The notes beneath the pieces are model-generated. The model was not told where the DNA came from. It worked only from the letters and a program-made list of their open reading frames with translations, and did no database searches. Positions 647-57,577 of a DNA stretch of 64,000 nt are shown here, one piece after another. Both the position numbers and the translations under genes were made by a program. The DNA lies in the IMG/VR virus record IMGVR_UViG_3300023174_000033, positions 124,001 through 188,000 of that record; one strand, 5' to 3'. Every line of letters begins with the position of its first letter. The first letter of the stretch is position 1.

Positions 647-1245
647 CGGTTTGTATCTGATTCGTGGTGGTCAATAAATTTTATATCAATCTTATCCATG
701 ATCTTGAAGATTTCATTTATATGGTAGGGTCTAAACTCTGGGTGAGTATCTACCCCAACATCCATAGACCTACCAATCCCCTTTAGACTTCCGTGGCTGT
801 GACCAAAAAGATGTATAACACCTTTGTGTGAAGCTGGCCATACTTGATGTGAGTAATGTGATAGGTGGAACTCCCTTGAACCAATTTTACCAGTAAAGAC
901 ATTTTGAACAGATTCAAAAAGGTCCATTGGATTAAAAGAAGTATCATGAAATTTAATTTCTTTGTTTGTGATGTGTTGGTCGTGGTTGCCCAACATTAGG
1001 TGAATGTTTTTGCAGATAAGTGATTTTCTAAAGTAGTAGATATTGTGGACACCCCCAAAGCTCCAATCACCTAGGTGATAAAGAATATCATCTTCACCAA
1101 CAACATTGTTGATGTTCTTAATAAGTGTATCGTTCATTTCTTGAACGGAATTGAAGTTTCTATACCCATCTTTCCAAGAAGAAACTTTAGGACCAGCAAT
1201 ATTGGTATGTCCGAAATGAGTGTCTGATGTAAACCATATGTTCAT
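643..1245 (-). CDS. Calcineurin-like metallophosphoesterase
   Basis: Motifs SDTHFGH, LGDW, GNHD, SHY, FGHSH. Confidence 0.9.
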   Translation of the reverse strand: MNIWFTSDTHFGHTNIAGPKVSSWKDGYRNFNSVQEMNDTLIKNINNVVGEDDILYHLGDWSFGGVHNIYYFRKSLICKNIHLMLGNHDQHITNKEIKFHDTSFNPMDLFESVQNVFTGKIGSREFHLSHYSHQVWPASHKGVIHLFGHSHGSLKGIGRSMDVGVDTHPEFRPYHINEIFKIMDKIDIKFIDHHESDTNR

Positions 1246-1249
1246 AATA

Positions 1250-1281
1250 CAAAAGTAGTATAAATCTTTTCAATTACCAAA
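1250..1281 (-). promoter_or_regulatory. Bacteroidota-type primary-sigma promoter (-33 TTTG / -7 TACTTTTG)
   Basis: Minus strand reads TTTG-N20-TACTTTTG-TATT-ATG(1245). Confidence 0.75.
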
Positions 1282-1285
1282 TTTT

Positions 1286-1293
1286 AATATATA
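1286..1293 (+). promoter_or_regulatory. Putative late promoter AATATATA (representative of about 16 copies)
   Basis: AATATATA 5 nt before ATG 1299; recurs in correct orientation before many genes (see findings). Confidence 0.6.
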
Positions 1294-1298
1294 AAAAT

Positions 1299-1676
1299 AT
1301 GAAGTATCTAAAAAAATTTGAAATGTTCCACTCCACTGGGTTAGATGATGGTAAAGATCACGTTGTTCCCAAGTATAATCCAAAAATAAGAAAGGAAGTG
1401 AGTGATTTTTTAGATGATTTGCCGGAGAGTAGTAAAATACAAGTTTTAAAATGTGTCGGAATTGAAGCGAACACTGAAGAAGATGGTGAGTTTGAGAAAC
1501 AATTTGAATTAGCAAAAAAGAAATTTATTGATTTCTTTGAAAACAACACAAATTTATCTATACAAACTATAGACTTGGAAAAATTCACAATTCCGGGGAA
1601 AGGCGGGGATGGAATACCTAGGGTAATGAATATTGGGGGAACAAGCCAAACTAACTCATTTAGGATAGGTCAGTAA
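1299..1676 (+). CDS. Hypothetical protein with capsid-targeting-like N-terminus (MKYLKKFE)
   Basis: 125-aa ORF directly after an AATATATA box. Confidence 0.65.
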   Translation: MKYLKKFEMFHSTGLDDGKDHVVPKYNPKIRKEVSDFLDDLPESSKIQVLKCVGIEANTEEDGEFEKQFELAKKKFIDFFENNTNLSIQTIDLEKFTIPGKGGDGIPRVMNIGGTSQTNSFRIGQ

Positions 1677-1729
1677 GAAACAATTTTGTAAAAACTAAAT
1701 ATAAGTAGAAATACAAAATTATTTTTATT

Positions 1730-2947: not shown

Positions 2948-2966
2948 TAATTTTTTCTTACCTTTG
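2935..2966 (+). promoter_or_regulatory. Bacteroidota-type primary-sigma promoter
   Basis: TTTG(2935)-N20-TACCTTTG(2959-2966)-N5-ATG. Confidence 0.75.
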
Positions 2967-2971
2967 TATCT

Positions 2972-3364
2972 ATGAAAAAGTTATTTTTAGACGATATCAG
3001 GATTCCAAAAGATTGTGCCAATGGACTGGTTCCTTCCCACATGAACAAAATGTTTTGGGAAAATGATTGGTACATAGTGAGATCTTATGACCAATTCGCA
3101 AAATGGATTGTTGAAAATGGGTTACCCGACTTCATTGCCTTTGACCACGATTTAGCGGATGTTCACTATAGAATGGATTTTTCGGGAAATAAAGAGAACC
3201 AAGGCACCGAAAGAACTGGATATGACTGTGCAAAATGGCTCGCCGACTATTGTATTCAAAATGGTAAAAAGTTACCCGAATTCGTAGTTCACTCTCAAAA
3301 TCCAGTGGGGAAACTAAATATTCAGTCGTATTTAGCAAATGTGAAAAAGTTCTTTGGAAATTAA
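2972..3364 (+). CDS. Cyclic-phosphate-processing receiver-domain protein
   Basis: Motifs LFLDDIR, FDHDL, TGYD, HSQNPVG. Confidence 0.8.
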   Translation: MKKLFLDDIRIPKDCANGLVPSHMNKMFWENDWYIVRSYDQFAKWIVENGLPDFIAFDHDLADVHYRMDFSGNKENQGTERTGYDCAKWLADYCIQNGKKLPEFVVHSQNPVGKLNIQSYLANVKKFFGN

Positions 3365-3378
3365 AAATATATAACACC

Positions 3379-3645
3379 ATGAGGATTCTTGTGGTGTTTT
3401 TAATTTTTTTGACTATATTTTCCTGTAAGAAAGAGAAATGTTATGACTGTGTACAAGTAATAAAAATTACTTGCAATAAAGATATTAAGGGGTATCCAGT
3501 AAACACTAAAACTCCACTAGTATCATGTGGGGACAATATAGACATAGTAGATGATCCCAAACCAATAATTTTCATTGATACTCTCGGTGACACAATTTAC
3601 ACGTATTGGAAAGATACTGATTGTAAAGAACAGGGATTATTCTAA
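3379..3645 (+). CDS. Small Cys-rich lipoprotein
   Basis: Hydrophobic signal ending in lipobox IFS-C, followed by KKEK. Confidence 0.7.
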   Translation: MRILVVFLIFLTIFSCKKEKCYDCVQVIKITCNKDIKGYPVNTKTPLVSCGDNIDIVDDPKPIIFIDTLGDTIYTYWKDTDCKEQGLF

Positions 3646-4388: not shown

Positions 4389-4793
4389 TTATTTTTTTCT
4401 ACAATAGGGACCAAGACCAGTTTCTACTGAAATAGGATCAGTTAATTGACGACCACACTTACCACACTTACCATCGTGAAAAATTTCAATGGACGTATTT
4501 AGTGTACCCATGCCCAAGTGATGAAATACATAATCAAACACAATTACAGATTTAGCATCATTACTAATTTTAGATTTTTTTGAGTATCTGAATCCATAAT
4601 TTATAATAGTTCCAAGAAACATATAATTATCTGGATTAGTCAGAACATGAACAAAGTAAATATCATCATACTTATGTTTTACCACTTTATAGGTAAAACG
4701 ATTACCAGATACTGGATTCTGAAATGTTACAAAAGCTTTTCCACCAAGAATAAAATCAGGTGCTCTGTCGTGTGATATCTGTCCTACTTTCAT
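4389..4793 (-). CDS. DUF6011-like Zn-finger protein
   Basis: C-terminal CGKCGRQLTDPISVETGLGPYC; TATCTTTG box (4798-4805) lies 4 nt before the ATG. Confidence 0.75.
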   Translation of the reverse strand: MKVGQISHDRAPDFILGGKAFVTFQNPVSGNRFTYKVVKHKYDDIYFVHVLTNPDNYMFLGTIINYGFRYSKKSKISNDAKSVIVFDYVFHHLGMGTLNTSIEIFHDGKCGKCGRQLTDPISVETGLGPYCRKK

Positions 4794-4862
4794 AATACAA
4801 AGATATAAAATCTTGGAAACAAAACCTAATTAGTGTGTATAAAAATAAAAAAATTATTTGGA

Positions 4863-9219: not shown

Positions 9220-9248
9220 AATATATAAAGAAAAATAATTATATTCAT

Positions 9249-9443
9249 ATGATAATAGTTGAAGTACATGGTGGAAAAGATGGTTTAGAAAAAGCCTTGA
9301 AAAAGTACAAAAGGAAATTTGAAAAGATTGGTGTTGGAAGAGAACTAAGAAGGAGAAAAGAATTCACAAAACCATCAGTTGAGCGTAGAAACGAAATTAA
9401 AAAAGCAAAATATATTCAAAATAAATTTTTGGATAATTTATAA
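9249..9443 (+). CDS. rpsU: Ribosomal protein bS21
   Basis: LEKALKKYKRKFEKIGVGRELRRRKEFTKPSVERR...KAKYIQ; Bacteroidota-like C-terminus. Confidence 0.92.
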   Translation: MIIVEVHGGKDGLEKALKKYKRKFEKIGVGRELRRRKEFTKPSVERRNEIKKAKYIQNKFLDNL

Positions 9444-10169: not shown

Positions 10170-13100
10170 TTATCCTCCAGGCCCAGGTCCGCCTCCACCC
10201 GGATCCTCTGTAGCTACTTGACCCGAAGCTTTTAAGAAATCACTGTCTGAAAGTTGTGAAGTTGTTGTCAAGTCAAAAACTGCCTCACTTGACTTGCTAA
10301 TAAATTTAGAACTTATTGAAATCTCAAAATTGTCAGTGAATGAGAAATTATTATTAGACAACTCAACGAATGGAGCTCTACCCTCTTGTGGAATTCTTGG
10401 ACTAAAGTCAATTTGTGTGGGTATATATGGGGCCCTCCCAAGAATCTTTGATGGGTCAGGATTTTCACCAGCTGCTAGAAAACTATTTGTATCAAAAACA
10501 GATGCTGAAAAGTATGAGAAAAATGGTAACATATTTACCTCATTTAATGATATATTTGAAATATCAATACTAAGTGGACCACCTCTTACAGGAAAACTAT
10601 TGAAAAATGTTATATCAAGATTTGTTTTATTCATAAAATATTCTGTTGACCTAACTCTCACTTTTGGATTTGGAAGAGGTTGTCCGGGTAAATTTGTTTG
10701 CGCCACAATTTCACCATTATAAAAATGATTCATGTATTGGTGAAGATTCTTTTGAGGTAATCCAAGGTTATCAGATTGCTGATCCAAATAACCGAAAATA
10801 TCGTCCAAGAATAAACCCTGATAGAAACCATCAAGTTGTGGAGGAGTTGGAGCATAATTTACTTTTAAATTATAAGTTATGTCAACAGACAATTCATAAT
10901 ATCTATTCGGCACAGGTTTAATATTTTTATTTTGAAGTATTTGTATCCAGTTTAATGGTGAGAATGTTGGAGCAAATGTTTCCACATAATCCGAAATTGT
11001 TAGTTTCAAAATATTATCATTGGCACTATCAGTATTCGAATCATAAGAATAATTCGCAGGTAAGTTCTTTGTCCAAACAGGTTCCGGTATTGGCAATACT
11101 GTTATTTTTCCATAGGCATTATAGGGATTAAATTCTGTTGGATTGTATCTCCTTTCCCCATTTAAACCGGCTCTATTCAATTGATCTTTAAAATAACTTA
11201 CCCATTGTTGCACAGACCCGCCAGCATCATACAATCCACTAGCATTAAATTCAGACCAGTCACCATAAATCAAATTTGTTGGAGCAAGTCTCATCAAGTT
11301 CTGATAGAAATGCACACCATGTGTTAGACCAGGTGTCTTTGGAGCCGAATATGGACCAGGTCCAGTTCTACCAGTTGTCTGATTTGTCTGAATAGGTGGT
11401 AATCCAGTAAACGATGATCTCTCACCAGTGGCTGTATTTATTGATCTTGACTGTGGATAGTCGTATCCAGCATCGGTAAAAGCCCATCCCAAAACGTCCG
11501 TATCGAATTTTATATCACCATATGGCGTTATACTCTGCCACCCTGTGGTTAATTGTATTCTGTTACCCAAAGGAGCGGATGTTCCACCATAACCGACGGC
11601 ACTAAATCCCCTTGGAATCCAACGGGCAGGTCCCCCAAATCTAGCTCCCTGATTATTATTAAATGCGTTCCATCCAAAATATTCATGTCCATTATTATTC
11701 CAACCACCACCAAGGCCATTAATTTGATTCGCAACAGCATAAATAAAACTAGCTAGTGGGTACGGGTACGGAGTACCGCCAAAGTAACCGAATGGGGTGG
11801 TAACGCCAGGATTATAATAAGCACCATTATTGCTATAATCATTGAATGGGTAGCAAGCATTTTTATAATATCCCATAGGTTGATTAACCTGAAATTCTTG
11901 GACCCCACTTCCTCCGTTCCTACCTCTAGCTTTTAACCAAGTTGGATAAGTACCATTTGCGACACCAGGCGTTCCGGACCATTTCAATGCTGGTTTTCGC
12001 AAATCATTCATTCTAAACTCAATTATATCACCTGAGGTAACAACTATTTCCCTTGGTTCGTAAGTTAGTGGCTTATCCTTGTCTCCATGCCCGACCTGAT
12101 TAATATACCAAGTTTTTGGAGCGGATCCGGCATATCCGGGCGGTACGTATTCAGACCCAACCCTTTGCCACAATGTACTAAACGTAAATCCTATACTAGT
12201 AAGTGTGGTAGCTACCGATCCAAGTTGTCTGGAAAAAGTAGCATTCGAGGAAATTGGTTTAATGAAATTACCATCGTTAGCGAGTAAATTAGAAAATACT
12301 TTTCTTTTTGTACCCAAATTATAAGTTCTTTTTGTCGTGGTTAGGAAATCTCTAAATTCGGAAACACTTGATAAAACATCAAGTGTTGGATAACCTTGTA
12401 AATTTGGAGCATTGAAAACTGTTGAAGTTGTTCTTGGTTTCCAACCGCCAACATTTGGATTCACACTTGTCGCCCCCGTAACTAGGTCTACTAATGGTTT
12501 ATCTTCATATTCTTGAAAATAAGCAGCATCTGCTTTTTCCGAACCTATCATCATTGGTATGAAATCACTAACACGCAATTGTGTAGTATCCAATTTCAAA
12601 TTAACTTTTGATTGAGTTGAGTAAACAACATCAATCCAAGATAGATACCGATTTGTAATATCCTCAGCCACAGTTGATTCCCATTTCCGGTTAGGGGCTG
12701 GGTTATTCAAATCTTTAAACCTGAAGTTTTGTATTAGACCGGTGTTGTGCCTTTGATAAATTGTAGAATTAGCTTTCTTTTCAACTGATTTAAAATGACC
12801 ACCTTCAAAAGCCCCATCAATGAAGTGGGAATCAATCATCTCTGTCAACACTGGAGTTCCTTTGAATAAACCATTATTCCAAACCCCTCTGAAAACACCA
12901 TTTAGAAAAGCTCCATTGGTCCAAACATTTGTTGTTATGTATATTAAATGATTAGAAGAGTCTTTCTTTATATAGGAAATAGGTGTCAAACTTTTATAAG
13001 TAACTGTAAGAGTATTTTCTTCCAATGAATAACTTTCCACATCTAATACACCGGAAATATAAATTCTACGATCATTATTATCATAAGCTGCCAAGTTACT

Positions 13101-16100
13101 CACAGATATTTTTTGCCCAACATCCAATTTTAGTTGGTACGCTGAAAGGCTATCAACTAATTGTATTTTTATAGACCAAAGTGTATCCCTAGATGTTTTT
13201 CTTATAGCAAAAAGTATATCGTTTGCTTTTAGCAAATCATCTACCTCAAAGAATCCAAAAGAACTTGAGTTAAATCTATAACCACCATTCCACACACCAT
13301 TCTCCCAAACACCTTGTCTGAAAACTCCATTTCCAAAGACAATACTATTTTGTCTATCAAACCCAGTGGGTAAACTTAAAACCACACTTGGAGTTGCTGG
13401 AATACCGATAAATTTTTTAGTTTGATCCACACCGGAATATAAGGCATTATTAAAATCAAAATTATACTCAATTTTTCTCCTGGTGACTCTCCAACTGTAA
13501 ATTCTTAAAATACCAAAAGAAGTCTTTCTTACCCAAAATCTATTTCTATCAGGATCTGGATTGTTAAGAACCTCTGGAGTAGTAATGTAATTAAATTTTA
13601 ACCTATAGAAAGCTGGAAAGAAACTTTCTCTCGGAACTCCTTCAGCACTATAATTAGCCTTTTTACTCTTTAAATCATATGTTGAATATGAAGCACCCGC
13701 CATCCAAACTTCAAAACTAACAGTATCGGTTAGTTCTACAGAAACTTCCATCTCGGTATAATATTGGTAACCATACCCTTGATAAATATCAACACCGCCA
13801 AGAGCAAAGTAGTAAGCTCTTCTTACGTCAAATTGTCTTTGAACACCCGTAGGAAAGCTAGCGATGTCTGTTCCATTTGGTGAAATTCCAAAATTAACAG
13901 ATAAAAATCCACTTAAATTCGGAGTTACACTCGCAGAAGATCCAAAATCCCATCCTGCAGTAACTGAGACACCCTGACCATAATATTGAGATCCAACATT
14001 TATTACCACATAACGGTTTTCAGTTGGAGAATACCAAGGGAATCCCGATATACCAATTTCCCTTATCAATTCAATTGCCTGATCTCGTTTTTCATCATCA
14101 GTTCCGGCAATCGCAGTTGTCGGTAAACCAACTTCCCTACTAAATTCCCTTGGAAAACCTGCGATGTCCATATTGTAGAAATAAATACCAATTCTGCTAC
14201 CAGTAACTCCATTGAAAGGTTTTTGGGAGGTGGTCGCTATTGCAGCATTAATTTGGGATATTAATGTATCAAATTGAGCCATAGAGTATCCTTTGGCAGC
14301 GTTTATACTCGCATACGATAACCATCTTGCATAAATCTTGTGACTCGGAGAACTATTTGGTATTAAACCACTCGCTCCCCCACTCACTGGTGCACCACTT
14401 TGTACATTATCCTCGGGTATATTTATTTGACTTTCCCCTAAATATCTTTTTGGATAAGTGTTATAACCCCTTGGGCTACTATTTATAGTCCTTGAATCAG
14501 ATGGCTCTGGTATAGGAAGGTTACCGTAATCTGAAAATTTGGTATAAAGATTAACTGGATTCCTATTCTGAGTTGTTGTGTCAAATGTTATCAAATTAGG
14601 CAATCCAGTGCTCGCATCATATGTGCCGTTCCAATAAAAAGGTATATTCAAAGACTGATCCCAATCTGAGCAAGCTTTAATGCTTGTCTCAAAATTTTTA
14701 ACTATTGCACTATTTCCATACTGAACAACTGGGACATAATCCAAAGCTTCATATGTTTCAGTAAGAGGTTTCGCCGGGTCCCCTGGTACATTATGTTCAA
14801 CAATTGCATTGCCCTCAGTGAAATGCGAACCTGTGGCCCAACCTCGGATAAACTCTGCGCTCTTATTGAGATCTAAAATATAACCCAATGAATTTTCAAC
14901 ACTGCTTATTGTTAAATACGCCTGAATTGTAGTTGAAGGATTATATATCGGCCAAGTGGGATTATTTCTGTAATTATAAAATCTAAGTTTAACACCAGCC
15001 TTGCCTTTAAAATTGTAAGGCAGCCCCGTTACATAAAAAAGTCCACCAAAAGTTAATCCCTCCACTATTGTGCAGAATTGTGTTGGCGTCGTTGTGGAAG
15101 TCACTGAACCCGCTGGTATAGTAGCTATAGGTGTCCCCACACTAGGATTGTAGGTGAAATCACTACCACCTAACCAACCAAACTTTTGACTTCTAGTAAA
15201 TTCCCAAGTTGAATCATTAGCACCCGATTGTCCACTCATCGTAAAAAAATTAAAACTTTGACCAGATAACCAAAATGTTAAGGGATTTGTAGTTAGAGCA
15301 GTCCTAACGTCGGTAAATGCCAGCACTGCTGGTGAAGCATTTGTTTTTACAGCGTAGGGGAAATAAATCTCATGATATTCCGAATCCCTTAATCTCAGAG
15401 CATTTGGGCTCTCCACCCCAAAGTTAAAACTGTAAGGACTAGCACTAAATACATTTGAAACAAAAATATAAGAGGTATCATTACTTTCAGCGGTTTTAAA
15501 AGTTTGTGGATAAGATTCTCTCATGAATCTATCGGTCCTCAAGATAATATCAAATTCCCTACCACGAGCAACGCTATGTGAATATCCAACTTCGCCTGGA
15601 TTTGCTGGACCAGTAGCAACGACTAAATGATTAAATGGAGATCCATTCCAATTTCCGTTTCTCCAAGTGCCACCATCCCAAAATATATTATCAGCATTTC
15701 CATATTCCCATATGCCATTTTTCCAATAAGCTCCCGACATATATCCGTTTTTGAATAAACCATTTTGCCATTCAGCCGCGTAAAAAGATCCTGTGACAAA
15801 AACACCTCTTTCCCATTTTATTAAATTTGGTTCAAAATAAAAAGCACTCGAAGCTGTAGAATATAAATAATCCCTATCTACATATGGGTTGAAAACACCA
15901 CCATCAAATGTACCATTGCTAAATGTTCCCTTACAAAAAAGTGAATTTTTAAATGTTGAATTTTCATAATCATATAGACCATCAATCCAAACAACATTTT
16001 GAAAATTAACCCTACTTTTTCTATCAGTTGTTTTTATAGCCCTCTTGATTTTTGACACAACTTTTTCATTGGTCACGTATAAAGATTTTTTCTCTGTAAC

Positions 16101-20837: not shown

Positions 20838-20892
20838 TTAACTCCTATAAATTTATTTATATATTAAATGGAGTTTATTTTCTTGAATGATT

Positions 20893-23136: not shown

Positions 23137-23168
23137 TTTGTACAATCCAATTTCATTCCCTACCTTTG
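23137..23168 (+). promoter_or_regulatory. Bacteroidota-type primary-sigma promoter
   Basis: TTTG(23137)-N20-TACCTTTG(23161-23168), ATG at 23176. Confidence 0.75.
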
Positions 23169-23175
23169 TGACACT

Positions 23176-34946: not shown

Positions 34947-35006
34947 TACTATGGTTTATTTTTTCAATATATATTAAGTTCCGACCTCTCAAATAAGTAT
35001 CGGAAG

Positions 35007-39138: not shown

Positions 39139-39146
39139 TATATTTG
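39115..39146 (+). promoter_or_regulatory. Bacteroidota-type primary-sigma promoter
   Basis: TTTG(39115)-N20-TATATTTG(39139-39146)-TATT-ATG. Confidence 0.75.
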
Positions 39147-39150
39147 TATT

Positions 39151-39888
39151 ATGATTATAATGTTAGGTGATATCCATGGAAACTTTAATTTCCTAAAAAA
39201 TCAAATCCAATCTAAAAAAATTACTGATTGTACGATAATACAAGTCGGTGATTTTGGAATTGGTTTTACACATAAGGACAATGACGAAATAACTTTAAAA
39301 AATTTAAACGATTTTTTGGAGTCACATAATGTTAATCTTTATGCAATTCGTGGTAATCACGATAATCCGGATTTTTTTGATGGAAGTTTTAGATATAGTA
39401 ATTTGAAACTTTTAAAGGATTACACAACTCTTAATATAGATGGGTTGAATTTTCTTTTCATTGGTGGGGCTATAAGTGTGGATAGAACCCAAAGAATTAA
39501 AGAAAATACAAGTAACATTAAATATGGTAGTAAAAAAAGGTGTTATTGGGAAAAAGAAGTATTGGAATACAAACCAGAGATTGTTAAATCTTTAAAAGAT
39601 ATAGATATTGTAATAACACACACTGCTCCAGATTGGTGTAGTCCAAGCAATAAATTGGGATTTGGAAGTTTTGTTGAAGATTGGAGTAAATATGATAGGT
39701 CTCTTATTACAGACTTACTTTCCGAAAGAAATCAAATGTCAAATTTATTTCTAGATTTATACGAAAACAATAAAATAAAAAAACACTTTTATGGACACTT
39801 CCATGATAGTAAATTTGAAACATATGATGGAGTTGATCATCACCTACTTGATATTAATGAATTTTATACATTAAATATAGATAGATAA
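39151..39888 (+). CDS. Calcineurin-like metallophosphoesterase
   Basis: GDIHG, VGDFG, RGNHD, THTAP, YGHFH. Confidence 0.9.
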   Translation: MIIMLGDIHGNFNFLKNQIQSKKITDCTIIQVGDFGIGFTHKDNDEITLKNLNDFLESHNVNLYAIRGNHDNPDFFDGSFRYSNLKLLKDYTTLNIDGLNFLFIGGAISVDRTQRIKENTSNIKYGSKKRCYWEKEVLEYKPEIVKSLKDIDIVITHTAPDWCSPSNKLGFGSFVEDWSKYDRSLITDLLSERNQMSNLFLDLYENNKIKKHFYGHFHDSKFETYDGVDHHLLDINEFYTLNIDR

Positions 39889-43626: not shown

Positions 43627-43649
43627 AATTATATATATTTTATATTTTT

Positions 43650-43681
43650 TTTGGCAATCCAAGATATTTGTAGTAATTTTG
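43650..43681 (+). promoter_or_regulatory. Bacteroidota-type primary-sigma promoter
   Basis: TTTG(43650)-N20-TAATTTTG(43674-43681). Confidence 0.7.
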
Positions 43682-43711
43682 TATATGGTAAATTATAACC
43701 AAAATACAAAT

Positions 43712-48563: not shown

Positions 48564-48624
48564 AGGTTTGGTTTTACTTTTTATATTATTTTTAATTTTT
48601 AAGTTTTTGTGTTATATTTGTCAT

Positions 48625-49263
48625 GTGAAATTTGATAACTATAGATACATCTATCCACCAAGACCGAAGAATGCTATATCCCCAAGTGAATTAAATTTTT
48701 GGGATAATAAGTCTCTCATTGTGCAACCAAAGTTTAATGGATCAAATACTACGATTTATACTGATGGTAGGAAAATAATCACCATGAATAGACATGGGCA
48801 AAAACTTACAAATTTTAAGATCAAGGATAATGAAATTTTAAATCTGCACAAATCTGGTTTGGGTAAGTGGACCGTTATAAACGGTGAATATATGAATAAG
48901 GGAAAAGTTGATGAAAAAAAAATAAACTTTAATGATAAATTTATAATTTTTGATATTTTAGTTTTTAATTCAGAATATTTAGTTGGTGAAACTTTTGCTA
49001 ATAGGATTGAACTTTTAAACAATACTTTTCCAATATACAATATTGGTTCCTCAACTTACAGTTTGTTTTCTGAAAATATAGGAATTGTTAAAAGTTATGA
49101 AAGTGGATTTTCAAATCTCTTTGAAAATCTATCAAAAATTGATATGATTGAGGGGTTAGTTATGAAAAGAAAAACCGCAAAGTTGGAAATTGGAAATACT
49201 GAAACTAATAACACCAAGAGTCAATTGAAATGTCGGAAACCAACCAAGAATTATAAATATTGA
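48625..49263 (+). CDS. Minimal ATP-dependent polynucleotide ligase-like nucleotidyltransferase
   Basis: Motif I QPKFNG, motif III INGE, IIIa IFDI, IV EGLVMK, V KCR; GTG start 4 nt after TATATTTG (48613-48620). Confidence 0.75.
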   Translation: MKFDNYRYIYPPRPKNAISPSELNFWDNKSLIVQPKFNGSNTTIYTDGRKIITMNRHGQKLTNFKIKDNEILNLHKSGLGKWTVINGEYMNKGKVDEKKINFNDKFIIFDILVFNSEYLVGETFANRIELLNNTFPIYNIGSSTYSLFSENIGIVKSYESGFSNLFENLSKIDMIEGLVMKRKTAKLEIGNTETNNTKSQLKCRKPTKNYKY

Positions 49264-49283
49264 AATTGAATATATAATTATGT

Positions 49284-50891
49284 ATGTTCAAATATTTACA
49301 CAAATTTCAATCTTTCTTTGAAGCAACTCTTAATATTCAAGAACTAGAAAAACCAGAGAAATCTTCTTCAAAGAAGAGAGGTCAAGTTCTTGTTAATAAG
49401 TTAAAATCAAAAGATCCAATTAAGAAAAAGGATGGTAAATTAGTTACTGTTGACAAGATGTATGTGGATGGTGATTGGGAAGAACCATTGGATGCTGTAG
49501 ACCAAATAACGACAGATGGTGAATATGACCAGGAAAAGGGTAAAGAATATTTTATAAAGAACTTCACACCTGATATGGATCCCAAAAAGTACAAGTATAG
49601 GGGAGTTTTCAAAGATGATGATGGTGACGAGTTTGGATTAACTCAAATTTTCAAATCTGTTGATTTTGGTTCAAAAGGAGCTGGAGTTGATACTGGAACT
49701 AATGAAGTTTTGCAAGCAATATTTATAGGAATCAGATTGGAAAGTAATGAGGACTTGAGTGCGGAAACTATAAGAAAGAGTTACCAAAGATATCTTATTG
49801 AAAGTGAAAAATCACCAACAGTAATGGTTGATGATAAATATGAAAATATTGATGATGAAAAATTGGAAAAGTTTTTATCAAGTCCAAATTGGGTAGAAAC
49901 ATTTATCAACATACCAAACCTTTTATTTTCATATGAAAAGGTTGTGGATAAACAATTCTCTCCTCTAATAGACCCCCAAAAATCATATCTGGTCTATCAC
50001 ACAAGTTTTAAATCCGATAAATCTCCATATTTAATTCTAAAAAAGAAATTCTTACAACTTTCTAAACTATCTAGATCCACAAAAAAAGACTTTAGTAAGG
50101 TAAATTTCAATAAGTTTTGTCCTGGTGATGTTTATCTGTTTGAGCCAAACTCAATCGGTGAATTCAAAAATGATATTGATAATTGTTCAGATATTGATCA
50201 GTTGATCAAAATTTGTGAACGTTATTATAATGAGAGTAGACTCATTCCAATATCACTGAAAATGGTAAAAGTTGGTGGTAGTTACAGTATAATTACCAAT
50301 AACGAGATTGGTTCAAATTCACCTCTATTCCTAATTGATAAGTTTATAATAAATGATGATCCATATAGGGGTATCAATTCAAAGATCAAAACTTCTTCTA
50401 TTTGGTTCTACAGGAAAGAAAATGTACATAGAGACAGGACTATAAATTTTGATTCGTCTGATACATCAAAATATACAGAGATTGATGGTGAAGTTGATGG
50501 ATCAACTTCTAGACATGGTAAAATTTCTCTTGAGCAAATAATTAGAATTATAAGAAAGAATAAACAATTAAATAAGATTGAATCAGTGAATGATTTGAAA
50601 AAATTAACTATTGGAGAGCTGGATGAGAAATTAATGAAATTGTTTGAAGAGTTAGACTCAAAGAGTGGAAATAAGATTCAATACAATTTATCTGATAGAG
50701 GATCAAAGATAGAAGGTAGTGAGAAGAAAATAATTTCAAAAATTCAATCTTTACAAGTTTTAAAAACTTTTTTTGATATTTATTCCAAAGACGAGAAAAT
50801 AGCGAACATTATAATGACAGATATTATGAAATTTGCTTTATCAATTCAAGTTGACTACTTCCTAACTCCTTACTATCTAAGGGTAATCTAA
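49284..50891 (+). CDS. Hypothetical protein, possible PD-(D/E)xK-type nuclease, with capsid-targeting-like N-terminus
   Basis: NE...PGDVYL...IPISLK pattern; begins MFKYLHKFQSFFEA. Confidence 0.5.
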   Translation: MFKYLHKFQSFFEATLNIQELEKPEKSSSKKRGQVLVNKLKSKDPIKKKDGKLVTVDKMYVDGDWEEPLDAVDQITTDGEYDQEKGKEYFIKNFTPDMDPKKYKYRGVFKDDDGDEFGLTQIFKSVDFGSKGAGVDTGTNEVLQAIFIGIRLESNEDLSAETIRKSYQRYLIESEKSPTVMVDDKYENIDDEKLEKFLSSPNWVETFINIPNLLFSYEKVVDKQFSPLIDPQKSYLVYHTSFKSDKSPYLILKKKFLQLSKLSRSTKKDFSKVNFNKFCPGDVYLFEPNSIGEFKNDIDNCSDIDQLIKICERYYNESRLIPISLKMVKVGGSYSIITNNEIGSNSPLFLIDKFIINDDPYRGINSKIKTSSIWFYRKENVHRDRTINFDSSDTSKYTEIDGEVDGSTSRHGKISLEQIIRIIRKNKQLNKIESVNDLKKLTIGELDEKLMKLFEELDSKSGNKIQYNLSDRGSKIEGSEKKIISKIQSLQVLKTFFDIYSKDEKIANIIMTDIMKFALSIQVDYFLTPYYLRVI

Positions 50892-51307
50892 TTTACCTTT
50901 GACTTGACTTCCCAGAAATCGTGTGGAATCATATCTCTGTAGATATCTTCAAACATATCCATAAAGTATTCAAATTCTGGCCTCAAAGCTTTTTCAAAAC
51001 TATCAATGTAATTTTTCCCCTTACTTGATCCAAAATGTACGTTATTATTAAAGTCTGTAATTATATAAATATCAAAACTTGATTTATTTATGGTAATTTT
51101 AGTTCTGAAAATTAATTCATCACCCTCACACCTTAAATCATAAACTTGAACTTTGATCACATCCTCATCATAAATCCGATTGATTGTTTTGGAATTGAAA
51201 AAATAATCTTCATCGTCTTCATTTTTAAGAAAAGGATAAAGACCCAAATTAAATGTTTCCTCGGGTGTCATTAGTTCATTAAATTTCTTTATCCCTTTGT
51301 TTTTCAT
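50888..51307 (-). CDS. Hypothetical protein (begins MKNKGIKKFNE)
   Basis: 139-aa ORF with TATATATA 4 nt upstream. Confidence 0.6.
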   Translation of the reverse strand: MKNKGIKKFNELMTPEETFNLGLYPFLKNEDDEDYFFNSKTINRIYDEDVIKVQVYDLRCEGDELIFRTKITINKSSFDIYIITDFNNNVHFGSSKGKNYIDSFEKALRPEFEYFMDMFEDIYRDMIPHDFWEVKSKVN

Positions 51308-51349
51308 AATCTATATATAATTTTGAATATATAAGTAAATATATTAGGT

Positions 51350-53262: not shown

Positions 53263-53895
53263 TTATTCGGAACTCCAAGAACCATCGCGACCAGATTTTT
53301 TCCAACCGGTTCTTCTTATTACCACTTGAAATTCATTCACTTCATATCTGTCTTTCCCTGATTCTAATTGATTGTAGAATCCATTTAGTCTTTCTGCCTT
53401 GGATAGTGTGGATTTTAGTGGGTTAACATTTAATCTTTTTACTCTTTCACCCAGTGATTTTGTGTATTTCACAAAACTATCAAGGGTATCATTGTCTTTA
53501 TACATTTTTATTTTATACTCATACTGACTACTGTAAACTATAAACGAATATCCATCATCAATGATATCTAAAAAAATATCTTCTATTTCAGCAATTTCGG
53601 GGAAAACACTCCTTTCTTCCCTTATCATTTTATAAACTTGAAATATTTTTTCTTTAAGTTCGGGACTTCCAGAATTTACAACACCATAGAGTTTTTGAGT
53701 GGCTGCTTTATACTCATCATATCCACTTTCATAAAAGTTAAATAAATTCTCAGTTTCTGAATTATTAAAAAAAAGGTCCGATATTGAGTTTGTTGGTTTT
53801 GAATCTTCTGAAAAATAATAAACAATTTCCATTGCCATTTCTTCCGTGAACCTACCATCCACTGATTCATTAAATGTATTCCACCCCTTTATCAT
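53263..53895 (-). CDS. Hypothetical protein (begins MIKGWNTFNES)
   Basis: 210 aa; AATATATA 5 nt upstream. Confidence 0.65.
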   Translation of the reverse strand: MIKGWNTFNESVDGRFTEEMAMEIVYYFSEDSKPTNSISDLFFNNSETENLFNFYESGYDEYKAATQKLYGVVNSGSPELKEKIFQVYKMIREERSVFPEIAEIEDIFLDIIDDGYSFIVYSSQYEYKIKMYKDNDTLDSFVKYTKSLGERVKRLNVNPLKSTLSKAERLNGFYNQLESGKDRYEVNEFQVVIRRTGWKKSGRDGSWSSE

Positions 53896-53946
53896 AAGGG
53901 TATATATTAAAGTTACAGATTTTTATTTTTAGAAAAAACGATACTA

Positions 53947-54393: not shown

Positions 54394-54398
54394 AAAAA

Positions 54399-54812: not shown

Positions 54813-54888
54813 TTTTTAATACTTTATTTTTTTTTTTAAAAAAGTATATATTCATTATTAAGTTTCTATTTGAAATATATAAATGGTA

Positions 54889-55440: not shown

Positions 55441-55452
55441 TTTTTTAATAAA

Positions 55453-56049
55453 TTAGTGCCAATCTTTGAATTCTATACCTAATTCCTCAATTTTAGAAAC
55501 CAATTCTGCTTTCAAATTACCATAATGTGGTGGGAAGTAATGTGGATGAAACTCAACAAATAATTTTTTTATTTTCCTAATCTGGTTAGTTTCAATTAAA
55601 TGTTCCAGTACTGCGAATTCACTACCCTCAATATCCATTTTGCAAATTATATTTGAATCGTCTGGTAAATTTTTCAAAAATTCTGAAAAATTTAAACTTT
55701 CTATCTTTATTGGTTCAACGATACCACATCTTTCCAAATATTGATTTTTCATATCATCAATAACAATTGATGAAGCGTGACCATCAACATTTGATACTCC
55801 ATCTGTGGGTGAATTTGACATACTCTTCACATGATTTTCTTGTTTGAAAAAAACATAACCGTCTTCAATCCAAACAGCTTTCTCAATTGGTGTTATGTTT
55901 GGATGATTTTTAGTACGTTCTACAATCATACATGCCGGATTCGCTTCAAATGAGTAAATATGATAGGTATCGTCAATAATCCCCATACTCAAAAATTGAT
56001 TAATTCCCTCTCCTAGATGAAATCCACAGTCTAGAAATATATTTTGCAT
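55453..56049 (-). CDS. FkbM-family methyltransferase
   Basis: FLDCGFHLGEG, FEANP, KMDIEGSE, VEFH. Confidence 0.85.
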   Translation of the reverse strand: MQNIFLDCGFHLGEGINQFLSMGIIDDTYHIYSFEANPACMIVERTKNHPNITPIEKAVWIEDGYVFFKQENHVKSMSNSPTDGVSNVDGHASSIVIDDMKNQYLERCGIVEPIKIESLNFSEFLKNLPDDSNIICKMDIEGSEFAVLEHLIETNQIRKIKKLFVEFHPHYFPPHYGNLKAELVSKIEELGIEFKDWH

Positions 56050-56114
56050 TTAATTTATATTAATTTTGATATTTATAATTCGGAAAAACATTAAAGTTTT
56101 TTTTTGTAAATTAT

Positions 56115-56145
56115 TTTGAATTCTAAAAACATTCCATTATCTTTG
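56115..56145 (+). promoter_or_regulatory. Bacteroidota-type primary-sigma promoter
   Basis: TTTG(56115)-N19-TATCTTTG(56138-56145). Confidence 0.7.
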
Positions 56146-56184
56146 TATTAAGAATTATAACGCACTTTTTAAAAAAACTATTTA

Positions 56185-57360
56185 ATGGATATAAGAAAAA
56201 AATTCCTAAAATTAACAAAACGTACTTACCCTTATGGAACAGAAACTCAACTGGTTTCTTTTTTGCCACAAGGATATTTCATGGACAAACATGGTAATTA
56301 CTATTATAAAATTGGTGAATCCAAGACAGCTTTCACTTGTCACCTAGATACCGCATGTAAAACACAAGTCACTGTAAATCATAAGATTGACAAGAATATA
56401 ATTTCTACTGATGGGAAATCAATCCTTGGAGCTGATGATAAAGCTGGTATGACAGTACTACTTTACATGATAGAGAAAAACATTCCTGGTCTTTACTGTT
56501 TCTTTATCGGAGAAGAAGTTGGGTGTATTGGATCTGGTAAAGCTTGTTATGACTACGAATTCACCAATTATGACCGTATGGTTTCTTTTGACCGAAGGGG
56601 TACAGAGTCAATAATCACCTTCCAATCATCAAAAAGATGTTGCTCTGATGAATTCGCTAACGAATTGGCAAATAGATTGAATAAGCATGGACTAACTATG
56701 AGGTCGGATAACACAGGTGTCTACACTGATTCTGCTGAATTCATTGATGCTATACCAGAGTGTACAAATATTTCAGTTGGTTATTACCGAGAACACACAA
56801 ACTTTGAGCATCAAGATATTGACCACTTGATTAAACTTTGTATAGCTGTTGCCAAAATTGATTGGGAAACACTTCCAGTTCAGAGAGATAAGACAAAGGT
56901 TGAATATAAGTCCTATTCATATAGTTCTTATAGTAACAAAGGATTTTCGTCTTACGATTATGATTCAAAAAAATACGGAAATGAAGCTGGATTTAGCACT
57001 TATGACTCTTGGTCAGGTTGGGACAAGTCTCCATCAAGGAGGAAAAAATATAAGAAAGAGTATGGTTACTATGACGATTTCTACTTTGAAGATGAAGAGA
57101 AGTATGACAAATATAGTTATGACCTAGATACTGGAGAAGAAAAAGTCGGAAGGTCTTACTATAACAGTATTGATAACGATATAACAGATTCTCGTAGCAA
57201 TCCTTATGTCAATAAATATTCCTCTTTAAGAGAAATGGTTTATGATGATAGACTGACCGATGCTGAAGTTCTTACTCTAAAAGATCAATACTTTGATTTG
57301 ACCGATAGAGAACAATTGGAAACTTATATTGATTTGAGAAATCAAGCGGCTTCCCTATAA
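56185..57360 (+). CDS. M28/M20-type metallopeptidase-like protein with Tyr/Ser/Asp-rich tail
   Basis: CHLDT, LGADDKAG, EEVGCIGS, SFDRRG, TNISVGYYREH. Confidence 0.82.
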   Translation: MDIRKKFLKLTKRTYPYGTETQLVSFLPQGYFMDKHGNYYYKIGESKTAFTCHLDTACKTQVTVNHKIDKNIISTDGKSILGADDKAGMTVLLYMIEKNIPGLYCFFIGEEVGCIGSGKACYDYEFTNYDRMVSFDRRGTESIITFQSSKRCCSDEFANELANRLNKHGLTMRSDNTGVYTDSAEFIDAIPECTNISVGYYREHTNFEHQDIDHLIKLCIAVAKIDWETLPVQRDKTKVEYKSYSYSSYSNKGFSSYDYDSKKYGNEAGFSTYDSWSGWDKSPSRRKKYKKEYGYYDDFYFEDEEKYDKYSYDLDTGEEKVGRSYYNSIDNDITDSRSNPYVNKYSSLREMVYDDRLTDAEVLTLKDQYFDLTDREQLETYIDLRNQAASL

Positions 57361-57560
57361 GGACAAATAATTTCTGAAGATTTTATTTTTTCATCAGGAG
57401 CATTTTGTATCTTTGACTCTGGTATGTTGTGGCTAATTAATAATTTGCTACCCTTTTTTTCAACAATTTGTACTGGTGTGACCATGTTGTTATACCAGTA
57501 TTCTATTAAAACCTTATCACCGATATTAAAATAATTTTTGTACTCTAAAATAAATTTCAT
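57342..57560 (-). CDS. Small SH3/KOW-like protein (begins MKFILEYKNY)
   Basis: FNIGDKVLI; AATATATA 5 nt upstream. Confidence 0.55.
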   Translation of the reverse strand: MKFILEYKNYFNIGDKVLIEYWYNNMVTPVQIVEKKGSKLLISHNIPESKIQNAPDEKIKSSEIICPYREAA

Positions 57561-57577
57561 ACTTTTATATATTAATT

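What the first reader, a model, noticed from the sequence alone, without database searches (positions are those of the whole stretch)
1243..57573. Both promoter classes often abut the start codon, suggesting pervasive leaderless mRNAs
Seen: TAnnTTTG is followed by only 4-5 nt before the start at 1245(-), 2972, 4793(-), 39151 and 48625 (three of these use the identical spacer TATT). AATATATA is followed by exactly 5 nt before ATG at 1299, 3379, 43626(-), 53895(-) and 57560(-). Established: the Bacteroidota -7 box ends about 5 nt before +1, and the T4 late box has similar spacing. Inference: many early and late transcripts start at or next to the AUG. bS1 and bS21 govern leadered versus leaderless initiation, so the phage may tune ribosomes towards its own mRNA classes.
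Basis: partly seen in the sequence, partly recalled or inferred. Interest (0 to 1): 0.68.

Follow-up and report, generated by a model that had tools for sequence, protein, structure and literature searches.

The report
Promoters abutting start codons: leaderless genes
In this 465-kb phage of Bacteroidota, about a fifth of all genes have a promoter box ending 4-6 bases before the ATG, so their mRNAs should start at the start codon; this layout is rare in the hosts, is shared by related huge phages, and still needs 5'-end mapping.

Summary
All ten cited sites check out, except that the start at 48625 is GTG, not ATG.

Across the whole 464,605-bp phage genome, without gene calls, AATATATA ends 4-5 nt before a long-ORF ATG 35 times (1.8 expected). 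TAnnTTTG ends 4 nt before one 15 times (about 2 expected).

There are two promoter classes:
- **Host type:** a Bacteroidota TTTG-N19-20-TAnnTTTG promoter.
- **Phage-specific type:** a tTAATATATAa box with no -35 element. It shows no link to gene starts in 1.09 Mb of candidate-host-lineage (Bacteroidota) DNA.

Each class sits in one of two registers. In the first, the box ends 4-6 nt from the ATG, which predicts a leaderless mRNA. In the second, it ends 16-26 nt away with an A-rich leader. Few sites fall in between.

At least 92 of 461 called genes abut their promoter. Start codons are sound, and orthologues keep the same ATG while switching register.

For the phage-specific box, the pattern recurs in two diverged relatives and in the 735-kb 'Mahaphage' genome, but not in Lak phage. 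For the host-type box it is weaker in the two relatives and nearly absent from the 735-kb genome.

No RNA data could be obtained, so transcript 5' ends remain inferred. The proposed tuning of ribosomes by phage bS21 and bS1 is untested, and one relative with no bS21 hit keeps the architecture.

The parts
1243..1257 (-). Host-type -7 box TACTTTTG + spacer tatt + ATG of the phosphoesterase gene 643-1245 (predicted leaderless)
   Evidence: PHROG phosphoesterase aligns from residue 1. The N-terminus MNIWF is conserved in more than 20 relatives, about 10 of them with the box at exactly d=4. The JGI gene call uses the same start.
2959..2974 (+). TACCTTTG + tatct + ATG of the cREC_REC gene 2972-3364 (d=5)
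   Evidence: Orthologues L004 and L005 keep box-N4-ATG.
4791..4805 (-). TATCTTTG + tatt + ATG of the DUF6011 gene 4389-4793 (d=4)
   Evidence: Orthologues have d=4 (L004, L005, L053) or a 14-19 nt leader.
39139..39153 (+). TATATTTG + tatt + ATG of the metallophosphoesterase gene 39151-39888 (d=4), with TTTG about 20 nt upstream
48613..48627 (+). TATATTTG + tcat + GTG (not ATG) of the ligase-like gene 48625-49263
   Evidence: sequence. The ligase domain spans residues 28-197 counted from 48625, and the first in-frame ATG (48784) would cut it.
43674..43687 (+). TAATTTTG + tat + ATG of the peptidase gene 43685-44824 (d=3). It is divergent from 43626(-), 58 nt away.
22567..22583 (-). TACTTTTG + 6 nt + ATG of gene 21463-22569
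23161..23178 (+). TACCTTTG + 7 nt + ATG of gene 23176-23799
1286..1301 (+). Phage-specific box AATATATA + aaaat + ATG of gene 1299-1676 (d=5)
   Evidence: Six orthologues all have the box 4-5 nt before a conserved MK(Y/F/W) start. The JGI call uses the same start.
3366..3381 (+). AATATATA + acacc + ATG of gene 3379-3645 (d=5)
   Evidence: The ATG is conserved in L004 and L005. JGI called GTG 3391 instead.
43624..43639 (-). AATATATA + taatt + ATG of the 749-aa gene 41377-43626 (d=5)
53893..53908 (-). AATATATA + ccctt + ATG of gene 53263-53895 (d=5)
   Evidence: The JGI call uses the same start.
57558..57580 (.). A 17-nt divergent intergenic region. One palindromic TATATA (57566-57571) lies 5 nt from ATG 57560(-) and 6 nt from ATG 57578(+).
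   Evidence: There are analogous 14-nt and 23-nt divergent pairs elsewhere in the genome.
51305..51319 (-). TATATATA + gatt + ATG of gene 50888-51307 (d=4)
49269..49286 (+). AATATATA + 7 nt + ATG of gene 49284-50891
9220..9443 (+). AATATATA + a 21-nt A-rich leader + the phage bS21 gene (9249-9443): an example of the leadered register
   Evidence: The G002 orthologue has the box at d=23.
10170..20865 (-). AATATATA (20865-20858) + a 20-nt leader + the 3555-aa gene: leadered register. 14 of the 23 genes of at least 800 aa are in this class.
31755..34975 (-). AATATATA (34975-34968) + a 21-nt leader + the 1063-aa gene
37041..37646 (+). Phage ECF-type sigma factor (regions 2 and 4_2). It is a candidate reader of the AATATATA box. 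TATATTTG lies about 105 nt upstream, at 36928-36935.
   Evidence: best hit Sig70_bacteroi1. Conserved in G002 (68%) and G004 (65%), which share the box. Upstream sequence.
24965..26059 (-). Truncated bS1-like protein (364 aa, S1 domains)
   Evidence: It aligns to the N-terminal ~370 of 580 positions of bS1 models, at 125 bits against a cut-off of 524. Conserved in G002 and G004.

Best explanation
The phage uses two kinds of promoter, and each kind is placed in one of two fixed positions relative to the start codon.

**Class S** is the ordinary Bacteroidota housekeeping promoter (TTTG, 19-20 nt, TAnnTTTG), read by the host RNA polymerase with the host primary sigma factor.

**Class T** is a phage-specific box, tTAATATATAa, with no upstream -35/-33 partner. 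It is probably read by the host core polymerase carrying a phage-encoded sigma factor. The ECF-type sigma at window 37041-37646 is the conserved candidate.

**Abutting register.** The box ends 4 nt (up to 6 nt) before the ATG. Transcription should then begin on the A of the AUG, giving an mRNA with no 5' leader, which must be translated by the leaderless route.

**Leadered register.** The box ends 16-26 nt before the ATG. This gives a 12-22 nt A-rich leader of the usual Bacteroidota kind, without a Shine-Dalgarno sequence.

**Between the two.** Leaders of about 5-10 nt are avoided. The likely reason is that they suit neither initiation route.

**What is shown:**
- the motifs, their spacing statistics and their orientation;
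- the -33 element of class S;
- that the start codons are sound;
- conservation across the clade;
- that the T box shows no link to gene starts in 1.09 Mb of Bacteroidota (mostly Saprospiraceae) DNA.

**What is inferred:**
- the exact transcript 5' ends;
- which sigma factor reads the T box;
- the early and late timing of the two classes;
- how the leaderless mRNAs are translated.
For: **1. Spacing.**
- Sharp peaks at d=4-5 for both motifs, with a trough at d=10-15 and a broad second mode at d=16-26.
- Poisson tails are 1e-32 and 3e-9.
- Only the abutting mode is tight, as expected if a fixed box-to-+1 distance coincides with the ATG.

**2. Geometry.** In F. johnsoniae the -7 box is T-12..G-5 with 4-5 nt to the mapped start (PMC6847099). 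TTTG-N4-ATG therefore puts +1 on the A.

**3. Class S sites are full promoters.** T is 72-79% at -36..-34 and G about 50% at -33/-32. The spacer is 19-20 nt in both the abutting (n=29) and the leadered (n=22) sets.

**4. The two T registers share the same flanks.** Both show t-T-a-A-TATATA-a and no -35 element. In the leadered set, A rises to 71-82% at the 5th-6th nt after the box, which is where the A of the ATG sits in the abutting set. Pyrimidine at -1 is 79% in abutting genes against 61% in the rest (p=9e-4).

**5. Start codons are real.**
- The next in-frame ATG is a median 57 codons downstream. Only 9.5% of T-abutting genes have one within codons 2-12.
- The codon score of codons 2-9 equals that of the other classes.
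- N-termini are conserved across relatives.
- JGI's independent gene calls agree at 5 of 6 sites.

**6. No room for another promoter.**
- Divergent ATG pairs lie only 14, 17 and 23 nt apart and share or overlap their boxes.
- Twelve abutting genes have a hairpin plus T-run 15-55 nt upstream.

**7. Evolution.**
- The same conserved ATG has the box at exactly d=4 in about 10 relatives and at d=15-24 in others.
- Among G000-G002 orthologues, the register is kept in 19 of 23 T-T pairs.
- The same bimodal T-box histogram appears in G002 and G004, in 55 pooled loci, and in the 735-kb LR756501, where the peak is at d=5.

**8. Contrast with cells.**
- In 1.09 Mb of Bacteroidota (mostly Saprospiraceae) DNA, about 9% of TAHHTTTG-to-first-ATG pairs abut, and AATATATA shows no association with starts.
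- The literature gives 3.7% of 5' UTRs under 10 nt in B. thetaiotaomicron, 5.5% leaderless in F. psychrophilum, and 13% with leaders of 10 nt or less in F. johnsoniae.

**9. Transcription machinery.**
- No Pfam RNA polymerase catalytic subunit, TBP or TFIIB was found.
- The phage encodes two sigma factors and a GreA/GreB-like factor, which fits use of the host core enzyme.
Against: - No RNA 5'-end data.
- For class T, the distance from box to +1 is assumed, not known.
- The T box has no -35 partner, yet the candidate ECF-type sigma has a region 4. ECF sigmas normally need a -35 element.
- Features reported to favour leaderless translation do not differ between the registers: an unstructured 5' end and A at +4. 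Everything in this AT-rich genome is unstructured and A-rich.
- The excess of abutting class-S promoters is strong in G000 (28 sites at d=3-7 against 18 at d=16-40). It is weaker in G002 (13 against 26) and in G004 (8 against 25; 8 of 61 scored pairs, about 13%, close to the cellular ~9%). It is nearly absent from 150 kb of LR756501 (1 site each at d=4 and d=5).
- A minority of sites sit at d=6-9, which would give 1-5 nt leaders.
- My gene caller is crude and conservative, so the counts are approximate.
Confidence: 0.75

Rival explanations
1. The AU-rich T box next to the ATG works in the RNA, not the DNA. On this view it is a ribosome or S1 landing site (a Shine-Dalgarno substitute) inside longer transcripts made from promoters further upstream, so these mRNAs would be leadered.
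For: - Bacteroidota initiation relies on A/U-rich upstream sequence and bS1.
- The phage encodes a bS1-like protein.
- The T box lacks a -35 partner.
- A motif ending 4-5 nt before the start is also where ribosome-binding sites sit.
- No RNA data exclude this reading.
Against: - The same box, with the same flanks and orientation, forms a second mode 16-26 nt upstream. A ribosome-binding site could not act from there.
- Terminator-like hairpins with T-runs lie directly upstream of 12 abutting genes. Divergent ATGs only 14-23 nt apart leave the box as the only intergenic DNA.
- The parallel class S shows the identical two registers and is a DNA promoter with a -33 element.
- Leadered genes use an A-run at -10 to -13, not TATATA.
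Confidence: 0.1
2. The T box is a promoter with a TATA-box-like geometry, with +1 about 20-25 nt downstream. On this view the 16-26 nt class is the leaderless one, and the 4-6 nt class starts inside the gene or uses another signal.
For: - The second mode (d=16-26, peak 20-25) resembles the archaeal TATA-to-start distance.
- A figure legend in the huge-phage survey lists TFIIB among factors encoded by some huge phages (PMC7162821).
Against: - No TBP, TFIIB or RNA polymerase genes were found by Pfam.
- The 16-26 mode is broad (11 nt), while the 4-5 mode is tight. A fixed geometry should make the leaderless class the tight one.
- Class S, whose geometry is known from host experiments, shows the same two registers.
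- The sequence after the box in the 16-26 class is an A-rich stretch like host leaders.
Confidence: 0.05
3. The effect is an artefact of start-codon choice or base composition. On this view the true starts lie downstream, or AT-rich motifs simply pile up before the first ATG of any ORF.
For: - The genome is 32% GC.
- The extended box contains TAA, which can put an in-frame stop just before the ATG and so make it the 'first ATG'.
- JGI chose GTG 3391 rather than ATG 3379.
- At 54883 the box is at d=1, and a second ATG two codons later gives d=7.
Against: - The histogram made without gene calls shows the peaks.
- AT-rich control motifs that contain TAA (TATAAATA, AAATAAAA) and TATAAT are flat.
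- 90% of abutting genes have no alternative ATG within 12 codons.
- N-termini are conserved in orthologues.
- Bacterial DNA shows no T-box signal.
Confidence: 0.03

Closest known systems
Bacteroidota housekeeping (sigma-ABfr / sigma-A) promoters: -33 TTTG and -7 TAnnTTTG
   Same: - The consensus is the same, including the near absence of G at the two middle positions.
- The spacer to TTTG is 19-20 nt.
- T at -4 and A at -3 are preferred (PMC6847099; PMC7366714).
   Different: - In G000, 29 of 51 such promoters put the ATG at or within 3 nt of the predicted +1.
- The comparable share is about 4-13% in mapped host transcriptomes, and about 9% in the like-for-like scan of Bacteroidota (mostly Saprospiraceae) DNA.
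Leaderless genes with the promoter -10 box a few nt before the start codon (lambda cI from pRM; Mycobacterium, Deinococcus, Streptomyces; GeneMarkS-2 'leaderless' genome class)
   Same: - The box-to-ATG distance equals the box-to-+1 distance.
- AUG is nearly always the start codon.
- There is no Shine-Dalgarno sequence.
- The spacing peak is tight (PMC4007540 and PMC4633059 as listed).
   Different: - It occurs in a phage of a phylum where leaderless mRNAs are rare.
- Two different promoter classes use it.
- It coexists with a discrete second register of short A-rich leaders, and orthologues toggle between the two.
T4-type late promoters (TATAAATA, no -35, gp55/gp33)
   Same: - An AT-rich single-box promoter without a -35 element.
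- It lies in front of packaging genes and giant genes (TerL, and proteins of 1063-3555 aa).
   Different: - The consensus is tTAATATATAa. TATAAATA has no positional signal here.
- The conserved phage sigma is ECF-like with a region 4, unlike gp55.
- T4 late mRNAs are leadered and carry Shine-Dalgarno sequences (my own knowledge).
Huge 'Mahaphage' clade phages of Bacteroidota that encode bS21 and S1 (Al-Shayeb et al. 2020; Chen et al. 2022)
   Same: - The nearest GenBank records are LR745206 and LR756502 (76% RecA identity) and the 735-kb LR756501.
- bS21 and an S1-like gene are present, and there are no Shine-Dalgarno sequences.
- Those papers propose that the phage ribosomal proteins favour phage mRNAs.
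   Different: - Neither paper analyses promoters, 5' UTRs or leaderless genes: the search terms had zero hits.
- The architecture described here supplies the mRNA-side feature that hypothesis lacked.
- It is absent from 150 kb of Lak phage.
Jumbo phages with mapped transcription starts (phiKZ, AR9)
   Same: Very large genomes with many AT-rich phage-specific promoters, often one per gene.
   Different: - phiKZ has no leaderless transcript, and AR9 has 5' UTRs of 26-491 nt.
- Those phages bring their own multisubunit RNA polymerases. None was detected here.

Membership tests
Bacteroidota sigma-A (-33/-7) promoter | -7 box TAnnTTTG (TAHHTTTG) | tested here: met
   53 gene-proximal sites in G000. 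The two middle positions are never G in the abutting set.
Bacteroidota sigma-A (-33/-7) promoter | -33 TTTG/TTG about 19-20 nt upstream of the -7 box | tested here: met
   T is 72-79% at -36..-34 and G about 50% at -33/-32. TTTG lies at a 19-20 nt spacer in 14 of 29 abutting and 11 of 22 leadered sites.
Bacteroidota sigma-A (-33/-7) promoter | Transcription starts 4-5 nt after the G of the box | not testable with these tools
The geometry is taken from PMC6847099.
Bacteroidota sigma-A (-33/-7) promoter | The host is a member of Bacteroidota | tested here: met
   The nearest cellular bS21 homologues (51-62% identity) are all Bacteroidota, mostly Saprospiraceae and Haliscomenobacter. The sigma factor's best model is the Bacteroidetes ECF subfamily. 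This evidence is indirect.
Leaderless mRNA | The transcript 5' end lies at, or within a few nt of, the start codon | not testable with these tools
   No RNA reads and no transcript-like contigs.
Leaderless mRNA | The promoter's -10-type box ends at the box-to-+1 distance from the start codon, as a tight peak | tested here: met
   Peaks at d=4-5 in G000, G002 and G004, and at d=5 in LR756501.
Leaderless mRNA | An AUG (rarely GUG) start, with no Shine-Dalgarno sequence or other upstream ribosome-binding sequence | tested here: met
   There is no enrichment for GTG or TTG at d=4-5. None of the 92 abutting genes has an SD-like motif. One GTG case lies at 48625.
Leaderless mRNA | The annotated start codon is the true N-terminus | tested here: met
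   Next in-frame ATG is a median 57 codons away. Orthologue N-termini are conserved. The JGI gene calls agree. No proteomic data.
T4-type late promoter | TATAAATA consensus at -10 | tested here: not met
   TATAAATA shows no positional association with starts in G000, G002, G004 or the pooled loci. The box here is tTAATATATAa.
T4-type late promoter | No -35 element | tested here: met
   Information content is at most about 0.3 bit at every position upstream of -4 relative to TATATA.
T4-type late promoter | gp55-like sigma lacking region 4, with the gp33/gp45 co-activators | not tested
   Only sigma-70 region 2 was searched. Both hits also carry a region 4.
Ribosomal protein bS1 (for the S1-like gene) | A full-length match above the curated equivalog cut-off | tested here: not met
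   125 bits against a cut-off of 524. It covers profile positions 18-373 of 580.
Ribosomal protein bS21 | A match above the curated cut-offs | tested here: met
   Pfam 44.8 bits against 27. TIGR00030 40.9 bits against 28.95.

The most novel reading that the evidence does not exclude
This clade of huge Bacteroidota phages writes its genes in two discrete mRNA formats under both host-type and phage-specific promoters. One format is leaderless. The other has a 12-22 nt A-rich leader. On this reading, the phage-encoded bS21 and the truncated bS1-like protein remodel host ribosomes during infection, shifting initiation between the two formats or away from host mRNAs. That would make leader format a layer of temporal or quantitative control. 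It would also be the first mRNA-side explanation of why such phages carry ribosomal proteins.
Probability: 0.15. Interest if true: 0.85.

Novelty: new member of a known kind. Interest (0 to 1): 0.6.

Why it matters
- **A concrete mRNA feature for an open question.** Huge phages of Bacteroidota were reported to carry bS21 and S1 genes, and were proposed to favour their own mRNAs. No distinguishing feature of those mRNAs had been described. This analysis gives one that can be tested: at least 20% of all genes, and about 46% of genes with a recognisable promoter, are predicted to be leaderless. In the hosts only about 4-13% are.
- **A newly described phage promoter.** The tTAATATATAa box comes with a candidate phage sigma factor.
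- **A gap in leader lengths.** Leaders of about 5-10 nt are avoided, which bears on how ribosomes that do not use Shine-Dalgarno sequences choose between initiation routes.
- **A practical lesson for annotation.** Gene finders tuned to ribosome-binding sites can misplace these starts, as at 3379 versus 3391.

Tried and rejected
- **RNA evidence.** I did not try to get round this. I looked for short transcript-like contigs ending at the ATG with the look-up of encoding contigs on three abutting genes and found none.
- **5' structure.** The folding energy of the first 30 or 45 nt, and the GC and A content of codons 2-11, do not differ between abutting and leadered genes.
- **A at +4.** This was proposed as a recognition signal for lambda cI leaderless mRNA (PMC10491246). 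It is not enriched in abutting genes.
- **Function-based timing.** PHROG and Pfam annotation of 20 window genes was too sparse to confirm the 'early' and 'late' labels. Only the positions of TerL, bS21 and the giant genes behind T boxes point to late expression.
- **HK97 capsid Pfam model.** It found nothing.
- **Phage RNA polymerase, TBP and TFIIB.** None was found. The T7-type model rang in no control genome, so that negative carries little weight.
- **The second, RpoD-like sigma (genome 458973).** It is not found in G004 or in the fetched 400 kb of G002. It is therefore a poorer candidate for the clade-wide T box than the ECF-like sigma.
- **bS21 as a requirement.** G004 has no bS21 hit but keeps the architecture. 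That record is only 91% complete.
- **Lak-A2 control.** I read TAG through in my own script, because Lak phages are reported to recode TAG. That is my own knowledge and was not verified here. No other non-standard code was used.
- **Not used or not met.** The large protein searches were not needed.

Full report
**What the window is.** The window is bases 124,001-188,000 of a single 464,605-bp IMG/VR virus contig.
- The contig has 32% GC, reads well in the standard code, and is 98% complete by CheckV.
- By RecA-like protein, its nearest GenBank relatives are the uncultured huge phages LR745206 and LR756502 (76% identity) and the 735-kb LR756501 (49%). The Lak phages are far more distant, at 33%. 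These belong to the 'Mahaphage' clade of Al-Shayeb et al. 2020, which was predicted to infect Bacteroidetes.
- The phage bS21 is closest to the bS21 of Saprospiraceae, Haliscomenobacter and Lewinellaceae, at 51-62% identity. A Saprospiraceae-like host is therefore more likely than Flavobacterium.

**Checking the observation.** All ten cited motif-start pairs are in the sequence at the stated spacing.
- One correction: the in-frame codon at 48625 is GTG. An out-of-frame ATG lies at 48623.
- Six more abutting sites lie in the window: 43685, 22569(-), 23176, 51307(-), 57578 and 49284.

**Genome-wide test without gene calls.** I measured the distance from each motif end to any ATG that opens at least 80 codons.
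- AATATATA (163 sites) has 19 hits at 4 nt and 16 at 5 nt, against about 0.9 per distance bin further out. The Poisson tail is 1.4e-32.
- After that comes a trough at 10-15 nt, then a broad second mode at 16-26 nt.
- TAnnTTTG has 15 hits at 4 nt against about 2 per bin (3e-9).
- The AT-rich controls TATAAATA, TATAAT and AAATAAAA are flat.
- ATATAT/TATATA at -5/-4 is the strongest positional 6-mer upstream of gene starts. An A-run at -10 to -13 comes next.

**Two promoter classes.**
- Class S is the canonical Bacteroidota housekeeping promoter. Aligned on the -7 box, both the abutting (n=29) and the leadered (n=22) sites show T at 72-79% at -36..-34 and G at about 50% at -33/-32. That is a TTTG 19-20 nt upstream.
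- Class T has the consensus tTAATATATAa. It has no information upstream of the box, and its flanks are identical in the abutting (n=63) and leadered (n=89) sets.
- About two thirds of all AATATATA copies lie 3-30 nt upstream of, and oriented towards, a long ORF's ATG.
- In 1.09 Mb of Bacteroidota (mostly Saprospiraceae) chromosomal DNA, the T box shows no association with gene starts. It is therefore phage-specific.
- The genome shows no Pfam-detectable RNA polymerase catalytic subunit, TBP or TFIIB.
- It does encode two sigma-70-family factors and a GreA/GreB-like factor. This fits use of the host core enzyme.
- The ECF-like sigma in the window (37041-37646) is conserved in two diverged relatives that share the T box. 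The RpoD-like sigma is not.

**Why the abutting register implies leaderless mRNAs.**
- In Flavobacterium johnsoniae the -7 box occupies -12 to -5, with 4-5 nt to the mapped start (PMC6847099). TTTG-N4-ATG therefore puts +1 on the A of the ATG.
- In leadered class T genes, A rises to 71-82% at the fifth and sixth nt after the box. That is exactly where the A of the ATG falls in the abutting genes.
- Pyrimidine at -1 is enriched in abutting genes, 79% against 61% (p=9e-4).
- Only the abutting mode is tight, as expected when a fixed box-to-start distance coincides with the ATG. The other mode spans 11 nt.
- In several places no other promoter can fit. Divergent ATGs lie 14 nt apart (genome 41553/41568), 23 nt apart (434648/434672) and 17 nt apart (window 57560/57578), and they share or overlap their boxes.
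- Twelve abutting genes have a hairpin plus T-run 15-55 nt upstream.

**Are the start codons right?**
- In abutting class T genes the next in-frame ATG is a median 57 codons downstream. Only 9.5% have one within codons 2-12.
- The codon score of codons 2-9 equals that of the other classes.
- GTG and TTG are not enriched at the abutting distance, and no class has a Shine-Dalgarno sequence.
- The JGI pipeline's own gene calls use the same starts at 1245(-), 1299, 2972, 4793(-) and 53895(-). It chose GTG 3391 over ATG 3379, but the ATG at 3379 is the one conserved in relatives.

**Evolutionary evidence.**
- In 55 related IMG/VR loci the pooled histogram repeats the pattern: AATATATA has d4=82, d5=31 and a second mode at 19-26.
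- For the phosphoesterase gene at 643-1245(-), the N-terminus MNIWF is conserved. The -7 box sits at exactly 4 nt in about ten relatives, and 15-24 nt upstream with an A-rich leader in others. The DUF6011 gene at 4793(-) behaves the same way.
- Whole-genome scans were run on two diverged relatives: G002 (400 kb of its 476 kb) and G004 (344 kb). Counts of AATATATA at 3-7, 8-15 and 16-26 nt are 51, 6 and 55 in G002, and 33, 3 and 30 in G004. G000 has 47, 10 and 49.
- Among G000-G002 orthologues with co-linear N-termini, 19 of 23 T-T pairs keep their register. Promoter class almost never changes.
- In 150 kb of the 735-kb LR756501, AATATATA peaks at 5 nt (11 sites). In Lak-A2 there is no peak.

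**How unusual is it?**
- With a conservative gene call of 461 genes, 63 class T and 29 class S genes abut their promoter, and 88 plus 18 are leadered. That is at least 20% of all genes, and 46% of genes with a recognisable promoter.
- Mapped Bacteroidota transcriptomes give 3.7% of 5' UTRs under 10 nt (B. thetaiotaomicron), 5.5% leaderless (F. psychrophilum), and 13% with leaders of 10 nt or less (F. johnsoniae).
- My like-for-like scan of Bacteroidota (mostly Saprospiraceae) DNA gives about 9%.
- The class S excess is strong in G000, weaker in G002 and G004, and nearly absent from LR756501. The class T pattern is strong in all three genomes and present in LR756501.
- Among jumbo phages with mapped starts, phiKZ has no leaderless transcripts and AR9 has 5' UTRs of 26-491 nt.
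- I found no paper linking huge or Bacteroidota phages with leaderless genes. The two key papers on bS21 phages do not analyse promoters or UTRs.

**The ribosomal-protein idea.**
- bS21 (9249-9443) passes the curated cut-offs. It sits behind a T box with a 21-nt leader, as does its G002 orthologue.
- The S1-like protein (24965-26059, minus strand) aligns only to the N-terminal two thirds of bS1 models and falls far below their cut-off.
- G004 has no bS21 hit and keeps the architecture, so bS21 is not strictly required for it.
- E. coli work shows that ribosomes lacking uS2, bS1 and bS21 translate a leaderless mRNA better (PMC10491246). That gives no simple prediction for a phage that adds such proteins. 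The link remains a hypothesis.

**Limits.**
- No RNA data could be obtained. Transcript 5' ends, the sigma factor that reads the T box, and the temporal classes are all inferred.
- 5' structure and A at +4 did not discriminate between the registers.
- The gene counts come from a simple caller of my own that misses some real genes, for example 643-1245.

**Verdict.** The leaderless reading is the best-supported explanation (about 0.75). The ribosome-tuning extension is open.

Noticed in passing
window 1-327 (-), running off the left end (genome 123857-124327): The phage encodes a GreA/GreB-like transcript-cleavage factor (JGI gene call with PF03449 and PF01272). This fits a phage that relies on the host's multisubunit RNA polymerase.
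   Followed up: partly
window 9249-9443 (+); loci L099-L178: The closest cellular homologues of the phage bS21 (51-62% identity) are nearly all Saprospiraceae, Haliscomenobacter or Lewinellaceae. The likely host family is therefore Saprospiraceae rather than Flavobacterium.
   Followed up: partly
window 37041-37646 (+); genome 458973-459701 (+) (L003:1360-2088): The phage has two sigma factors. One is ECF-like (best model: the Bacteroidetes ECF subfamily) and is conserved in relatives G002 and G004. The other is a short RpoD-like factor (regions 1.2, 2 and 4) that was not found in those relatives.
   Followed up: partly
window 43685-44824 (+) and 56185-57360 (+): Two paralogous peptidase genes (both phrog_4191) carry class S boxes in different registers: d=3 at one and d=39 at the other. 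This is a within-genome example of register switching.
   Followed up: no
genome 41553(-)/41568(+), genome 434648(-)/434672(+), window 57560(-)/57578(+): Divergent gene pairs have ATGs only 14, 23 and 17 nt apart. One palindromic TATATA, or two overlapping boxes, appears to serve both directions.
   Followed up: partly
window 3379-3645 (+) and 54883-55440 (+): Start-codon details. The JGI pipeline starts the first gene at GTG 3391, but ATG 3379 is the codon conserved in relatives. At 54883 the box is only 1 nt away, and the in-frame ATG at 54889 (d=7) may be the real start.
   Followed up: partly
window 10170-20837 (-), 27174-31754 (-), 31755-34946 (-), 59649-63998 (+): Giant ORFs of 3555, 1526, 1063 and more than 1450 aa have no Pfam family, apart from a weak BNR-like hit in the last. 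Across the genome, 14 of the 23 genes of at least 800 aa use the leadered T register and only 2 use the abutting one.
   Followed up: no
window 53947-54393 (-): A Dam-type DNA methyltransferase (PF05869 in the JGI call) lies just upstream of the abutting gene 53895(-).
   Followed up: no
locus L182-L184 (LR756501.1, 560001-710000): In the 735-kb phage genome the T box abuts starts at 5 nt rather than 4, often as TATATAG. Class S abutting sites are almost absent there. This suggests a slightly shifted start-site geometry in that lineage.
   Followed up: partly
genome 261786-263930 (-): The large terminase (Terminase_6N, 83 bits) has its TATATA 10 nt before the ATG. That falls in the otherwise depleted zone between the two registers.
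   Followed up: no
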